From Ophelia neglecta (Eukaryota), in NCBI GenBank assembly GCA_965285935.1, contig OZ260666.1, forward strand, positions 7,688,001 to 7,752,000: DNA of 64,000 nucleotides, given 5' to 3'. The notes below the pieces were generated by a model, which saw only the letters and a program-made list of their open reading frames with translations, did not search any database and was not told the DNA's origin. The translations under genes and the position numbers were made by a program. This document shows positions 23 to 43,293 of the stretch, piece after piece. How positions within the stretch are numbered: position 1 is the first letter of the stretch; every line of letters begins with the position of its first letter.

Positions 23-2518
23 GGCTGTAGCAAAGAAGCTAGCAGCTTTGCATCACTATCCACCTGACATGGCTACGGCTGGTTTTGAAAGCAGCATGAA
101 TCTCAACAAAGTTCCGATTATTCTAACCATCATAGATATGGTAAAGAAATGGCCTACCTTCAAGGACTCCTACGACGACCCGTTCAAAGAAAAAGTGTGA
201 GAATGAATTTTCATTTATCATTCATTGAGAAATATAATATTCGTATATATCAGTGAATTGAACTCACTTTCGCCTTGTCGTCTTTGAGTTCGGATACTGC
301 ATGTCAAGATCGTATAAATTTTGATTTTATTTTATCTTGATCTCATAATCCCAGTTATCTTTTCCGTATGAAAAAAAGGTTCATATATATAAATCTGCTC
401 TTTGCTCCTTATTTCAAAGTCGGTTCATGGAGTTTCCAAGCAAGGCCGATGCGATTAAGCTGCTAGAACTGTACGGCAAGGAGCTAGTAGAGATGGGTTT
501 TCCTACCTGTTTTTGTCACAGTGATCCTCACGCTACAAACATCATCTACGACTCTAATGCAGGTAACGTTAGTCTATCAAAAAGCACGAATGCAAGGGGC
601 TCTCATATTAATCAGAAAGGACCTTACTTATATGAAACCCGCTTAATCAAACATAGTAGCGAACGCATCAAGCATATGTTACAGCCTTAAGGAAGAATAC
701 CGATAAGACTAAATATGGCACTTAACCGGACATTCTATAAGTTTGGAGCATGAGACGTAAAACTTACCTGTCCTGGCGGTTTGATTATTATGCTTTATTC
801 ATACTGTCTCATGATGTAAAATAAAAGATTCAAAGCGCTAAATCTGAAGAAAAAAATCAATACAAAAAACGATCGGTAACAGTTGAAGCTCCCCGTTGAA
901 TGTTTGTTTGTTTAGGCGAGATACACCTGATTGACTGGGAGTTCTCTGGTATTGACTATGCAGCACACGATATCGGCTGGTATTTTGCTGGGAGGATATG
1001 TACGTTATGTCTGGCTAGCACCGATGTGTCTTAAGTTTCAATTAAAAAGGCCTTTGGTTTGCGGTTTATTTGTGTTTTGCTCAATTGTGCATATTCGCGA
1101 TTTTCTTGAATAAATTAATGGTTTTGGAAGATTTACCTGTGTTTGAAGTCAATCTATTTTGAAATATCTTATACTTGACTTATTTTTCTCCAGTGGTTGA
1201 CGACTGTGCAGACGACGCCTTGAAGTTTTATCCAGACAAGGCGTACCAGTTGAAATGGATACGCTGGTACCTGGAGTACTCAGCCGAACTGCGTGGGGAG
1301 GCACATGAAACTGTCACCGAGGCTGCTATTAACAAACTTTACAAGGGTTCTTTACTATGTGGTTTGGTAAAATCCTATTCGCCTATTATATAATGAGTTT
1401 ATATACATTTGACATTAATTAAAGCACTGATTTTCGTCAGCGCTCGCGTTGGTTTGGCAGTGCGCGTCAAATCTATTTATGTGAAAAAAGGTATCTCCCG
1501 TCGGGCAATTCTCAAGGAAATCTCCAAGAGGTCACCAAACGGGGAATGTCCTGAATTTTTTTCCCGTATTTAATGTCTTTAAAGGATTAAATAACTGGCA
1601 AAAGCAACGTCAATATTAAACGTTAATGTATCAACCCGCTTCGCCAATAGAGAAAAGCTCTGACGAGAACTTGAACTGTTCTAAAAAGTCTTTGCACGGT
1701 TTTACAAGTTTAAAAAGACTGATAATTGACCGGTAATGCTTGACCGTAATCACGAGTGGAGTAATATTAAACATAATTTATATCATCAGAATTAATAGGA
1801 AGAAATTTCAGACCTATAAAATACACGTGAAATGTATTTTAACAGTAAGTTGTAAGACTTGACCAATAAGATATCATTTTGAACTGTGTCGTATACACTA
1901 GTATATTGCATTATCAATCAGGATCCTGAAGTTAAATTGGGGCTTTGTATTCATAATTTTCATTTTTTTACAGATTAGAAGTGTAGCGGGTGTTGTATTT
2001 TTTCGTATGCAAGACGCAATGACACCTTCTAACGCTAATTATTTCAGGTGGGTACCGTTATTTTCAATATATTTTAAAAACCGCTGACACAAGCAAACTT
2101 CTATTTAACGCCTTATATTTACATATAATGAACGACTCTCTATTAAAATAAAATATTGGGTGAAGGGATGGGGGAGGGGATTAGTAGACGATGCGCCGTA
2201 TTTCTTTTTGTACAAGAGTAATCACCAATTGACGGATAATTTTAGTAAAGCACGAATAAAGACGGGAATCCAAATTGTGCGGAAAGAAGCAAGGCCCGAA
2301 TCGGCTATGGAGCGAACCGACCCAGTTTACATACATATAATGATTGGGCATCGTTGGAATTTTTAACGGACATCAATACTATTTAATTCGATCAATTTAC
2401 TTGTGTCCCTTTGTTATGTTATTTTCCAATTGTCTTAATGAATACATTTATTTTCAGAAAAGCTAGGCAATTTCAACGACTCTGTCGTGTTATCAACGAT
2501 GAACATTATAAAAAGTAA
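23..2518 (+). CDS. Ethanolamine/choline kinase-like gene, copy 1 (subfamily A; 5'-partial). Exons 4-9: 23-196, 420-562, 916-999, 1194-1366, 1974-2047, 2458-2518
   Basis: GT-AG exons join in phase. Brenner-type motif FCHSDPHATNIIYD and choline-kinase motif LIDWEFSGIDYAAHDIGWYF; YPDKAYQLKWIRWYL; stop TAA at 2516-2518. Exons 1-3 lie upstream of the window. Confidence 0.88.
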
Positions 2519-4663
2519 ATCAGAAATGCGCCTATTAGAATCAGTCGATACATTCTTATTGACATTGATAGTAAAATGTTAACGTACCCTTTTAGGCGCC
2601 AACCTTTATACCGATAGGCCTTTACATATTCAATATAAAATGGCGAGTAAATAATCAATGAGCCTATTTATTCATATAATCACATTTAATTTCCGTAAAA
2701 TAGATATTACTCCAAAACCATTTGAATCGAACAGTATGCGGAAGTTTCTTTCCTGTTTCAGTAAGCGTTTAGAGTATACATTACTTTGTGAACATATCAA
2801 TGAATGTCATATTTCTGGTCATAACGGTTGTGCCTTCATATAAATATAAAACAAAGAGACGTTCCATTTATATATGAAAGACTTACATTTTTAAATTGGA
2901 TATGTAATACAGTGGCCAAGAATGTTACCGCAAGTATTTCCTGTCTTGAATAGCTAGCAATGGCAGTATAACTTCATTATGTAATGTGATTATTTCTATA
3001 TTTCTAACGCTTCACAATATATATTTATTTGCCCTCTTGTGTTTTTTAAACGACAACAGACCAACTTGCGCGAGTTGGTTGCCAGGACCTTCTGTAATCT
3101 TTACCTGTTAAGACCTCTAATTTTTTTTTTTTTTTGCATTTTAACCCACTGAGGTAATTAAATGATGTTAACATAATGTTGCTAATCGGTAGATCAGCCC
3201 GATTAGTTCGAATGATAAAAATACCCTTTATTATAAGACTGAATATGTATATTATTGTTTTCATTATCAGCTTTTTGGAGTTTGGAGTGCATTGTATTAC
3301 AGCAGACACTATGATTAAGCTTCCTGATATAAGAATAATAAACGTGTTGTATGATCAAGGTTTTCCTTCCAAGTTGTTTGATTAAACCGGTACTTTGGCT
3401 TATAACGATTATATATATAAAATGCGTTTTATAATATATGGTATGGTATGGTATGAAATTGTATTTATTTAGACAAATTTTTACATTGATATAGGCAGGT
3501 AAGTACAACAAATACTGGAGGTTAGTACTATATATATACATCATTTATGGTAAATTTACACTACTTATATGACAAGGAGACTCCCATTTCGCGAGGAATG
3601 CTATCATAGGAGCCACCTGATAAAATGACAAGACTGTGAGAAATACACAATGTCTCTTGTCTGCTTTGTTATATATCCTTATTTAAAGAACAATGATCCT
3701 AAGACATTAAGATAGTGCGAAATGTATGTTGCACGACATGACCATGTACTGCATGTACAGAGAAAAGACAGCCAGATAATAATTATCATAATAATCTTAA
3801 ATAAACAGAGTGGATACCCTGCAGTCAAAGCCATATCATTAGTCGCGAATAGTCCATTTAATCGGTCCAAATGATTAGAAACCAGCAGCCACAGTTCACA
3901 CATCAATAGATCGATCTCCAGCTCTCAGGTGGTTAATGAAAACATAAGTTTGATATAGTTTGCAAGTAGTCACCAATTTTCTATGATGCGGGTCAGAAAA
4001 CAAAACAAACCAGTCAGTGTTCGACGTAGGACATAGATGAAATATGCCCATGGAGAGTAGATGAGGATCTATGTTTTTTCAAAATATTGAATCTAATGAT
4101 TAAATTGTCTCAATAAACGGGTCCCTATCAAATAAAGTGAGGGGGGAAATATAGAAACGACGAGTGATATTAATGCTTACTATTTTTATTTTAATCGGAC
4201 ACCTGGCTTCCACCAACTTTGAATTATTTGAGAAGCCATCTATGCAAAGCGGTACTAGACAATAAATTTCAGGGAAAAGGTTAATTATGTTTATTTATGC
4301 GTCATACTTCATATGCCATGGTTTTAGCTTAAGGTTGAAACATTAAGATACATTGTTAACGCGAAAACGGACTCATTTCATTCACAATAATTGACATAGG
4401 TGTTTTGTTTGTGATCAATCAGGTGACTAAATATGTCGTTTTAACATTTGATCAATAATTATGCTTGGTTTATTGCCTTGCTATCGATTATCTACGAGTA
4501 TGACCTTTGATCATGGAACTTTGATTCATAATATCATATTTGTAAAAAAAAACAGTTTGATCAATATTATATATATTCAGATTGCAAGCATCAGGTGCCA
4601 CCATTGCCTAACTCGTGGCGGCAAATATACCTATATATCATTCATCAAAATAAAGCCCAAAGT

Positions 4664-43000: not shown

Positions 43001-43293
43001 AGTTGAAACTGCCACTTTTCATGCCATTAACAAATAATTGTGAAACGACAAAAAGTTACCACAGTAAAAATACCAGTGTCAAAAACCAAAGGTTGCTGAT
43101 TTGATTTTAATCCAATCAGAAAGTCCTTGATTTAGTTTTTATTTACATACCAATAATCAGTAGATATCTCCGCCGGCACTTTATCAATTCCCAAAATGTA
43201 ATAATTATATTAATGACCTTTATTTTCAGAAAAGCCCGTCACTTTCAGCGACTCGTTCGGCTCATCAAAGATGAACACAGAGCTGACAAATGA
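37045..43293 (+). CDS. Ethanolamine/choline kinase-like gene, copy 5 (subfamily B, about 363 aa). Exons 37045-37149, 39709-39893, 40443-40523, 40806-40988, 41210-41352, 41863-41946, 42224-42396, 42774-42847, 43230-43293
   Basis: Spliced length 1092 nt, open. GGQLNQ, HSDPNTSNII, VDWEFSG. Intron 4 donor is GTCAGT. Confidence 0.87.
37720..38113. mobile_element. Fold-back non-autonomous element (about 394 bp) in intron 1 of copy 5
   Basis: Absent at the paralogous site (28301-28320). Has a 59-bp inverted repeat (37730-37788/37804-37862) around GCCGAAGGC and a perfect 21-bp IR (37869-37889/38093-38113). Confidence 0.8.

What the first reader, a model, noticed from the sequence alone, without database searches (positions are those of the whole stretch)
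23..43293. Expanded array of choline/ethanolamine-kinase-fold enzymes with intact catalysis but a rebuilt substrate pocket
Seen: at least five open paralogs in two subfamilies. All keep the H-x-D-x4-N and D-x-E catalytic/metal residues. They read HSDP(H/N) for canonical HNDL, DWE(F/V/L) for D(Y/F)EY, VLVK for VL(L/V)R, and HDIGWYF for YDIGNHF. At the position of the HFFW(G/A)LW helix they read IRSVAGVVFF or MRSIAVAFYF, with no Trp. Known: in choline/ethanolamine kinases the Tyr of DxEY and those Trp residues line the amino-alcohol pocket, and these are normally low-copy housekeeping genes. Inference: a lineage-specific small-molecule kinase family with a different substrate (detoxification or specialised metabolism), analogous to the insect EcKinase-like expansion but derived from the ETNK branch.
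Basis: partly seen in the sequence, partly recalled or inferred. Interest (0 to 1): 0.78.

Follow-up and report, generated by a model that had tools for sequence, protein, structure and literature searches.

The report
Expanded divergent ethanolamine-kinase-like gene array
The window holds five intact tandem genes from a family of at least 70 divergent ethanolamine-kinase-like enzymes in an invertebrate genome; they keep the catalytic residues but have lost the residues that hold choline or ethanolamine, so they probably phosphorylate something else, still unknown.

Summary
Five + strand genes lie in the window. Each has 9 exons, all with GT-AG splice sites, and all are open (359-363 aa). They form two subfamilies: A1-A3, 92-97% identical to each other, and B1-B2, 90% identical. 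A and B are about 68% identical.

All five keep H-x-D-x4-N and D-x-E. They replace the residues that are near-invariant in 142 ETNK-like homologues: R to K, HNDL to HSDP, DxEY to DWE(F/V/L), NHF to WYF, and the two Trp of HFFWGxW.

- **Local cluster:** the window is part of a 17-gene cluster at C9:7.675-7.892 Mb.
- **Family size:** an exon-7 search gave 105 hits genome-wide, about 78 of them full-length, and only 3 with stops.
- **Other subfamilies:** several more divergent subfamilies exist elsewhere in the genome.
- **Canonical gene:** an ETNK with all standard motifs sits at C9:51.21 Mb.
- **Retrocopy:** an intronless copy (L001, 41% identical) matches PF01633 at 137 bits. Its predicted structure (pLDDT 92) resembles ETNK and choline kinase structures.
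- **Public relatives:** an exhaustive search of 1.84 billion proteins found nothing above about 34% identity.
- **Selection:** dN/dS between A and B is 0.21-0.27.

Expression and substrate remain untested, because no RNA runs were available. My verdict is a real, lineage-specific, probably neofunctionalised small-molecule kinase family: a new variant of a known kind.

The parts
23..2518 (+). Gene A1, exons 4-9 (23-196, 420-562, 916-999, 1194-1366, 1974-2047, 2458-2518). Exons 1-3 lie upstream of the window at G000:C9:7686562-7687722. The complete gene encodes 359 aa and is intact.
   Evidence: Exon projection with AG/GT at all junctions. Translation. Full gene joined with L032.
6649..10684 (+). 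Gene A2, 9 exons (6649-6753, 7311-7495, 7739-7819, 8118-8291, 8537-8679, 9034-9117, 9312-9484, 10089-10162, 10612-10684), 363 aa, open. Reads DWEV and IRSVSQVVFF.
   Evidence: It is 95% identical to A3.
15556..19454 (+). Gene A3, 9 exons (15556-15660, 16218-16402, 16645-16725, 17025-17198, 17424-17566, 17920-18003, 18198-18370, 18912-18985, 19394-19454), 359 aa, open.
   Evidence: Exon-wise Pfam PF01633 scores: 26.0 bits (exon 2) and 20.4 bits (exon 6).
27620..34476 (+). Gene B1, 9 exons (27620-27724, 30733-30917, 31459-31539, 31795-31977, 32257-32399, 32909-32992, 33270-33442, 33984-34057, 34416-34476), 362 aa, open. Intron 1 is 3.0 kb.
   Evidence: Junctions read by hand. Model and translation. 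Exon-wise Pfam.
37045..43293 (+). Gene B2, 9 exons (37045-37149, 39709-39893, 40443-40523, 40806-40988, 41210-41352, 41863-41946, 42224-42396, 42774-42847, 43230-43293), 363 aa, open.
   Evidence: Exon 1 found by DNA alignment. Remaining exons. It is 90% identical to B1.
32351..32374 (+). Catalytic loop H-S-D-P-N-T-S-N of B1 (Brenner-type HxDxxxxN). Equivalent sites begin at 514, 8631, 17518 and 41304 in the other copies.
   Evidence: H, D and N are kept, and they are present in 139, 138 and 139 of 142 homologues.
32926..32979 (+). D-W-E-L ... H-D-I-G-W-Y-F segment of B1. The metal-binding D and E are kept. The Tyr333-equivalent is Leu (F, V or I in other copies), and NHF is replaced by WYF.
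33984..34022 (+). Helix MRSIAVAFYFRML of B1, encoded at the start of exon 8. It is homologous to (S)HFFWGxWxxxQ. The first Trp is Val (Gly or Gln in A copies) and the second Trp is Tyr (Phe in A copies). The intron position before this helix is shared with the genome's canonical ETNK.
5974..6117 (-). Inverted relic of the second half of exon 7, upstream of A2. A second copy lies at 14860-15024 (-), upstream of A3. Similar relics accompany most A-type units of the cluster.
   Evidence: tblastn. Genome hits covering query residues 23-57 to 26-57 on the opposite strand.
12833..12913 (+). Orphan exon-1 relic (starts M-R-T-L-D-I-K, ends R-P-G-W) with no splice donor. A similar relic is at 35071-35151, and a stop-containing A-type exon-1 relic is at 45118-45183.
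19650..28290 (+). Two tandem copies of a 4.32-kb spacer unit at 99% identity or more. Each carries an intact B-type exon 1 (23298-23402 and 27620-27724).
   Evidence: the repeat finder families D5, D9, D11 and D15. Offset scan.

Best explanation
The window is a slice of a 17-gene, roughly 220-kb cluster of tandemly duplicated genes. They belong to a family of at least 70 members that arose from an ethanolamine-kinase-type ancestor in this invertebrate lineage.

Each gene encodes a cytosolic-looking, single-domain protein of about 360 aa with the choline/ethanolamine kinase fold. The ATP-side machinery is conserved: the glycine-rich GGxxN loop, a beta-3 basic residue (Lys in place of Arg), the HxDxxxxN catalytic loop and the DxE metal site. 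I therefore infer that the proteins still transfer the gamma-phosphate of ATP to a hydroxyl group.

The acceptor pocket is rebuilt. The aromatic cage that holds the ammonium head group is lost: the Tyr of DxEY, the Asn-His of NHF and the two Trp of the HFFWGxW helix are replaced. The Glu that follows NHF in the motif (E in 109 of 142 homologues) is Gly. I infer from this that the acceptor is not choline or ethanolamine but some other, probably less cationic, small molecule.

Pocket-equivalent positions differ even among 95%-identical paralogues, which hints that substrate range varies between copies.

Shown here: gene structure, intactness, family membership, fold (for a paralogue), motif states, copy number, purifying selection, and the presence of a separate canonical ETNK. 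Inferred: kinase activity, a changed substrate, and a role in detoxification or specialised metabolism by analogy with insect EcKL genes.
For: - **Gene models:** nine exons each, all GT-AG, all open. An intronless retrocopy, L001:1408-2502:-, is colinear with the models across all eight junctions.
- **Family membership:** locally joined models score 253-264 bits against a profile built from 102 public ETNK-like proteins, while 40 shuffled controls gave no hit. The retrocopy scores 137 bits against PF01633, whose cut-off is 29.
- **Fold:** the AlphaFold2 model of the retrocopy has pLDDT 92.2. It matches P. vivax ETNK and human CHKA/CHKB at TM 0.69-0.78.
- **Motif statistics:**. The pocket residues of ChoK alpha1 are taken from PMC4814829.
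- **Canonical ETNK:** the gene at C9:51.209-51.214 Mb reads HNDLLLKN, DFEY, ANHF and HLFWGLW. It groups with animal ETNKs. The window clade plus L001 is a 99% SH-aLRT clade on a 0.73 stem outside them.
- **Copy number:** 105 exon-7 hits and 72 exon-5 hits, almost all open.
- **Selection:** dN/dS between A and B is 0.21-0.27 with dS 0.7-0.9. Exons are 95-96% identical and introns 92% identical in the recent pairs.
- **Lineage restriction:** the best public relative is about 33-34% identical among 1.84 billion representatives.
Against: - No expression data exist. The only runs holding the locus are DNA contigs.
- No biochemical evidence exists.
- B1 versus B2 has dN/dS 0.80 (37.5 non-synonymous against 12.5 synonymous differences). 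That is compatible with relaxed constraint on at least one recent copy.
- The structure and full-length searches used the retrocopy L001, which is 41% identical, as a proxy, because joined spliced models could not be submitted.
- The pocket inference rests on alignment, not on a structure of the window proteins.
'No close relatives' therefore cannot exclude sister species.
Confidence: 0.6

Rival explanations
1. The genes still encode ethanolamine or choline kinases. The expansion would then serve dosage or tissue-specific supply of phosphoethanolamine or phosphocholine, and the pocket substitutions would be tolerated drift.
For: The nearest named relatives are all ethanolamine kinases. The catalytic residues are intact. 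The second Trp is replaced by another aromatic residue, Tyr or Phe.
Against: Five or more independently conserved pocket or rim positions are changed together. The Glu after NHF (E in 109/142) becomes Gly and the first Trp becomes Val, Gly or Gln. A canonical ETNK, plus a neighbouring second copy, is retained for the housekeeping role. Seventy or more copies is hard to explain as a dosage effect.
Confidence: 0.12
2. The array is a young, largely non-functional product of unequal crossing-over. On this view most copies are unexpressed and decaying, and they merely have not yet picked up stop codons.
For: B1/B2 dN/dS is 0.80. Exon relics lie between the genes. There are near-identical segmental duplications. 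There is no RNA evidence.
Against: A and B diverged at dS of about 0.8 yet keep dN/dS 0.21-0.27, and all 8 splice junctions are intact in every copy examined. Only about 3 of about 78 full-length exon-7 copies genome-wide carry a stop. A 41%-identical retrocopy retains a full open frame. Catalytic residues are invariant across A, B and L001.
Confidence: 0.1
3. The proteins are non-catalytic binders or pseudokinases, or they phosphorylate a macromolecule (protein or glycan) rather than a small molecule.
For: The acceptor site is unlike that of any characterised member, and no substrate is known.
Against: Every residue needed for phosphotransfer is conserved, which is not the pseudokinase pattern. 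The whole protein is a single compact ChoK/ETNK-like domain with no added targeting or docking module.
Confidence: 0.08

Closest known systems
Animal ethanolamine kinases ETNK1/ETNK2 (EC 2.7.1.82; Pfam PF01633)
   Same: - Same fold and length, about 360 aa.
- Same GGxxN loop, HxDxxxxN and DxE motifs.
- Best database hits are ETNKs.
- The intron position before the HFFWG-equivalent helix is shared.
   Different: - Only 22-27% identity.
- Arg becomes Lys in beta-3.
- HNDL becomes HSDP, DxEY becomes DWE(F/V/L/I), NHF becomes WYF, and the Trp-x-x-Trp helix is lost.
- 70 or more copies, against 1-2 for ETNK.
- The genome's true ETNK orthologue is at C9:51.21 Mb.
Choline kinases CHKA/CHKB and Plasmodium ChoK (solved structures 2ckq, 3g15, 3feg, 6yxs)
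   Same: The structural model of the paralogue L001 superposes at TM 0.72-0.78. The catalytic residues are the same.
   Different: Residues equivalent to the choline cage (Tyr333, Trp420, Trp423) are replaced, and so is the conserved Glu after NHF. Sequence identity is 14-19%.
Insect ecdysteroid kinase-like (EcKL, PF02958) family and nematode CHK-like/DUF1679 family
   Same: These are large, tandemly arrayed, lineage-specific expansions of small-molecule kinases of the same superfamily. EcKLs are candidate 'detoxification-by-phosphorylation' enzymes (PMC10859841, PMC9387500).
   Different: They are a different Pfam family. L001 scores 22.0 bits on EcKL against 137 bits on PF01633. The expansion here is independent and ETNK-derived. 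No functional data exist here.
Divergent 'ethanolamine kinase 1-like/2-like' paralogues of other invertebrates (Lineus longissimus XP_064621284 and XP_064642641; unnamed ENA and Logan proteins P0062 and P0142)
   Same: They also lack the Tyr of DxEY, the NHF motif and the Trp helix while keeping HxDxxxxN and DxE. P0062 and P0142 are the weakly supported nearest neighbours in trees.
   Different: Identity to the window proteins is 27% or less. The branches are long, so the relationship is uncertain. No comparable copy number is documented for them.

Membership tests
Pfam PF01633 choline/ethanolamine kinase family | Significant match to the family profile over the whole domain | tested here: met
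   The paralogue L001 ORF scores 137.4 bits (cut-off 29), profile positions 2-280 of 300. Window exons score 26.0/23.4 bits (exon 2) and 20.4/13.2 bits (exon 6) in colinear profile positions. Locally joined window models score 253-264 bits against a profile of 102 public ETNK-like proteins, and shuffled controls gave none. The joined models were not sent to Pfam itself.
Pfam PF01633 choline/ethanolamine kinase family | Brenner phosphotransferase motif HxDxxxxN and metal-binding DxE | tested here: met
   HSDP(H/N)xxN and DWE are present in all five window genes and in three neighbours.
Pfam PF01633 choline/ethanolamine kinase family | Choline kinase motif in its canonical form (D-x-E-Y ... D-I-(A/G)-N-H-F-x-E) | tested here: not met
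   D, E, D, I, G and F are kept. Tyr becomes F/V/L/I, Asn becomes Trp, His becomes Tyr and Glu becomes Gly.
Pfam PF01633 choline/ethanolamine kinase family | Bilobal ChoK/ETNK fold | tested here: met
   The AlphaFold2 model of paralogue L001 has pLDDT 92.2 and pTM 0.91. Top Foldseek matches are 2qg7 (ETNK) and CHKA/CHKB at TM 0.69-0.78. The window proteins themselves were not modelled.
Canonical ethanolamine kinase (ETNK1/2 orthologue, EC 2.7.1.82) | Orthology with animal ETNK in a tree | tested here: not met
   The canonical ETNK of this genome, at C9:51.21 Mb, groups with animal ETNKs. The window clade lies outside on a long stem with 99% SH-aLRT.
Canonical ethanolamine kinase (ETNK1/2 orthologue, EC 2.7.1.82) | Conserved amino-alcohol pocket residues (Tyr of DxEY, Trp-x-x-Trp helix) | tested here: not met
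   these are present in 104, 94 and 98 of 142 homologues and are absent here.
Canonical ethanolamine kinase (ETNK1/2 orthologue, EC 2.7.1.82) | ATP-dependent phosphorylation of ethanolamine | not testable with these tools
   This needs an enzyme assay.
EcKL (PF02958) ecdysteroid kinase-like family | Best profile match is to PF02958 | tested here: not met
   The L001 ORF scores 22.0 bits on EcKL, at its cut-off, over residues 189-267 only, against 137.4 bits on PF01633.

The most novel reading that the evidence does not exclude
This ETNK-derived family has at least 70 copies. Together with several sister subfamilies that have other catalytic-loop variants at C9:35-36 Mb, C5:60.3 Mb and C9:51.75 Mb, it may form an independently evolved 'conjugation by phosphorylation' enzyme system for xenobiotics or specialised metabolites in a lophotrochozoan-like marine invertebrate. 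That would be a counterpart of insect EcKLs built on a phospholipid-synthesis enzyme, with substrate range diversified through the Tyr333- and Trp420-equivalent positions.
Probability: 0.3. Interest if true: 0.75.

Novelty: new variant of a known kind. Interest (0 to 1): 0.55.

Why it matters
Choline and ethanolamine kinases are normally low-copy housekeeping enzymes of the Kennedy pathway. A family of 70 or more members, under selection, with intact catalysis and a rebuilt acceptor pocket would show that this scaffold can be recruited for new small-molecule chemistry in animals. Insects did the same with EcKLs.

The family offers a defined set of natural pocket variants for finding new kinase substrates. 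It also flags a large block of genes that automatic annotation would mislabel as 'ethanolamine kinase 1-like'.

Tried and rejected
- **Word-index protein search** with the full-length retrocopy: 1484 candidates, none at E <= 1e-5.
- **RNA evidence:** no RNA run holds the locus. The three holders are DNA contigs from one sample, with no splice joints.
- **More of the genome:** The arrays at 9.4, 11.6 and 20.9 Mb and on C7 could only be counted, not modelled.
- **Exon 6 against PDB sequences:** no hit even at E 10.
- **Nearest unnamed relatives:** contig look-ups for P0142 and P0062 gave no organism and no tandem context.
- **Literature:** searches for described ETNK or PF01633 expansions in animals found nothing relevant.
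- **Taxon:** not established. The canonical ETNK is nearest to one from the annelid Ridgeia, among others. Earlier scan notes disagree between bivalve and annelid.
- **Joined models:**, joined spliced models were not sent to any search, family or structure tool. Only single exons by reference and the intronless L001 ORF were sent. Joined models were used only inside local scripts.
- I redid it from files.
- **Rejected readings:** the B-type exon-1-like pieces at 12833 and 35071 as real first exons (no donor site, stop soon after), and EcKL membership.
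Full report
**What is in the sequence**

The window is G000:C9:7688001-7752000 of a 762-Mb eukaryotic assembly. It has about 36% G+C and no long bacterial-style ORFs.

Comparing stop-free segments of an A-type and a B-type repeat showed nine conserved coding blocks separated by unalignable DNA.

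I read the junctions of copy B1 by hand. The result is a nine-exon model of 1089 nt (362 aa) with AG/GT at every intron.

I projected its exons onto the other repeats. The same nine exons appeared with the same lengths and AG/GT sites in all copies, and every copy translates without a stop:

| Copy | Length | Note |
|---|---|---|
| A2 | 363 aa | complete in window |
| A3 | 359 aa | complete in window |
| B1 | 362 aa | complete in window |
| B2 | 363 aa | complete in window |
| A1 | 235 aa in window | C-terminal part |

A1's first three exons lie in the 8 kb upstream of the window, and the complete gene is intact at 359 aa.

B-type genes have a 2.6-3.0 kb first intron. Exon 1 of B2 was located by DNA alignment.

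Identities are 92-97% among A1, A2 and A3, 90% between B1 and B2, and 66-69% between A and B.

Position 23 is the first base of A1 exon 4, and 43293 is the stop codon of B2.

**Family and fold**

Single exons give colinear but sub-threshold PF01633 hits.

A genome-wide PF01633 scan turned up an intronless 364-aa ORF on another chromosome (L001:1408-2502:-). It is 41% identical to the window proteins and colinear with them across all eight exon junctions. I read it as a retrocopy of this family.

The retrocopy is useful in three ways. It independently supports the splice model. It implies past germ-line transcription of a family member. It also gave me a full-length proxy that can be submitted by reference.

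- It scores 137 bits on PF01633 (cut-off 29), against 46 bits on APH and 22 bits on EcKL.
- Its nearest solved relatives by sequence are P. vivax ethanolamine kinase and human choline kinase beta.
- Its AlphaFold2 model (pLDDT 92.2, pTM 0.91) matches ETNK and choline kinase structures at TM 0.69-0.78.

In a local script, the joined window proteins score 253-264 bits against a profile built only from 102 public ETNK-like proteins. Forty shuffled controls gave no hit.

**Catalytic core kept, pocket changed**

I aligned the window proteins with 142 of the best public homologues. The catalytic residues are conserved in those homologues and kept in all window copies:

| Position | Homologues with the residue (of 142) |
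|---|---|
| H of HxDxxxxN | 139 |
| D of HxDxxxxN | 138 |
| N of HxDxxxxN | 139 |
| D of DxE | 139 |
| E of DxE | 137 |
| G of the GGxxN loop | 132 |
| N of the GGxxN loop | 133 |

Positions that are otherwise strongly conserved are replaced together:

| Canonical residue | Homologues with it (of 142) | State in the window genes |
|---|---|---|
| Arg of VLVR | 137 | Lys |
| Asn of HND | 121 | Ser |
| Leu of HNDL | 105 | Pro |
| Tyr of DxEY | 104 | F, V or L (also I in a neighbour) |
| Asn of NHF | 104 | Trp |
| His of NHF | 110 | Tyr |
| Glu after NHF | 109 | Gly |
| First Trp of the HFFWGxW helix | 94 | Val (B), Gly or Gln (A) |
| Second Trp of the helix | 98 | Tyr (B), Phe (A) |

In human ChoK alpha1 the choline site is the aromatic cage Tyr333, Tyr354, Tyr440, Trp420, Trp423 and Phe435 (PMC4814829). 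From my own knowledge of the motif, Tyr333 is the Tyr of DxEY and Trp420/Trp423 are the helix tryptophans.

Among the five 92-97%-identical A-type genes I could assemble, the Tyr333-equivalent reads F, V, F, I, F, and the Trp420-equivalent region reads AG or SQ. This hints at diversification, but there are too few sequences for a test.

**Not the animal's ordinary ETNK**

A search of the genome with a fish ETNK, followed by inspection of the exons, shows a canonical gene at C9:51.209-51.214 Mb. It reads FTDGITNK, HNDLLLKN, IDFEY, ANHF and HLFWGLWGLVQ, and is 50-58% identical to animal ETNKs. A second similar copy lies about 10 kb away.

The intron before the HLFWG helix is at the same position as the intron before the MRSIA/IRSVA helix of the window genes.

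In an IQ-TREE tree (mixture model, quick search) the canonical gene groups with animal ETNKs, with the annelid Ridgeia among the nearest. The four window proteins plus L001 form a clade with 99% SH-aLRT support on a 0.73 stem outside that group. Two unnamed long-branch sequences join them weakly.

The tree has no choline-kinase outgroup. 'ETNK-derived' therefore rests on three points. The named hits among the 30 cluster representatives I looked up are all ethanolamine kinases. The catalytic loops of the 150 best hits are mostly the ETNK-type HNDLL. One intron position is shared.

**Size of the family**

- Exon 7 of B1 finds 105 places in the genome. About 78 cover the whole exon at 42% identity or more, and only 3 of these have a stop.
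- Exon 5 finds 72 places.
- The local cluster spans C9:7.675-7.892 Mb with 17 genes, six on the + strand and eleven on the - strand. Those I could assemble from fetched flanks are intact.
- Further arrays lie at C9:9.35-9.9, 11.6-11.72, 20.27-20.98 and 24.5-26.1 Mb, and on C7. Single copies lie on C1, C2 and C8.
- Other, more distant subfamilies keep HxDxxxxN with other variants: HMDPVPQN and HLDPNPQN at C9:35.3-36.2 Mb, HCDWRNEN at C5:60.3 Mb, and H(G/M)D variants (HGDIYCSN, HMDVNRAN) at C9:51.75 Mb. An earlier scan note (s1-741969) points at the 36-Mb group.

**Selection**

Nei-Gojobori estimates:

| Comparison | dN | dS | dN/dS |
|---|---|---|---|
| A versus B | 0.18-0.22 | 0.70-0.91 | 0.21-0.27 |
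| A2 versus A3 | 0.023 | 0.101 | 0.23 |
| B1 versus B2 | 0.045 | 0.057 | 0.80 |

The B1/B2 value rests on 37.5 non-synonymous against 12.5 synonymous differences, so relaxed constraint or diversification in that young pair cannot be separated.

Coding sequence is 95-96% identical and introns 92% identical in the young pairs.

Exon relics lie between the genes. They include inverted exon-7 fragments, donor-less exon-1 copies and one stop-containing exon 1. They show what decay looks like here and contrast with the intact genes.

**Relatives elsewhere**

The word-index search found nothing. The exhaustive phmmer search of 1.84 billion cluster representatives with the retrocopy gave 1568 hits at E <= 1e-3. 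The best single-domain hit is 33% identical (150.7 bits, E 4.9e-39).

Divergent ETNK-like proteins that also lack the pocket residues exist, for example in the nemertean Lineus longissimus. They are 27% identical or less to the window proteins.

One caveat applies. The tools state that records of this genome, or of one very near it, may be left out. Absence of close relatives therefore cannot exclude sister species.

**What could not be tested**

No RNA run holds the locus. The three holders are DNA contigs from one sample, so expression is unknown.

Substrate and activity need experiments. The window proteins themselves were not folded or searched as joined models.

**Verdict**

The new substrate and the detoxification role remain inference by analogy with EcKL (PMC10859841, PMC9387500).

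I class it as a new variant of a known kind and give it moderate interest.

Noticed in passing
window 19650-28290: A 4.32-kb spacer unit is present as two tandem copies at 99-100% identity. Each carries an intact B-type exon 1 (23298 and 27620), so B1 has two possible first exons. This is either a very recent duplication or an assembly artefact.
   Followed up: partly
window 57308-63061 (- strand): Exons of a gene with two Temptin_C pieces (62768-63061 and 60370-60714) and Cu2_monooxygen N-terminal domain pieces (59389-59760 and 57308-57628) lie in the order expected for one gene. This looks like a temptin-like module joined to a copper type II ascorbate-dependent monooxygenase domain.
   Followed up: partly
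window 55192-55515 (+) and 46293-46619 (-): Mobile-element remnants. One is a DDE_3 transposase C-terminus inside the Tc1-like element noted earlier (s1-740852). The other is a zf-RVT piece of a retroelement.
   Followed up: no
window 30500-30636: A short stretch in intron 1 of B1 has summed contig depth of about 400,000-840,000, against 20-140 for its surroundings. It is a very high-copy interspersed repeat.
   Followed up: no
L001 = G000:C1:118661404-118665294, ORF 1408-2502 (-): An intronless, fully open 364-aa member of the family lies on another chromosome. It is a retrocopy that keeps HNDP, DWEF and all catalytic residues at 41% identity to the window genes, which suggests it is itself functional.
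   Followed up: yes
G000:C9:7805429-7851142: Pairs of exon hits with identical scores lie about 27.9 kb apart (7814388/7842333, 7805429/7833376, 7823021/7850969). They indicate a recent segmental duplication of a three-gene block inside the minus-strand arm of the cluster. One gene of each block has a TAG in exon 7.
   Followed up: no
G000:C9:35.3-36.2 Mb, C5:60.34-60.39 Mb, C9:51.75-51.79 Mb (L003-L028): There are further tandem subfamilies of ETNK-like genes with intact HxDxxxxN loops but other variant residues (HMDPVPQN, HCDWRNEN, HGDIYCSN). The whole superfamily, not just this clade, is expanded.
   Followed up: partly
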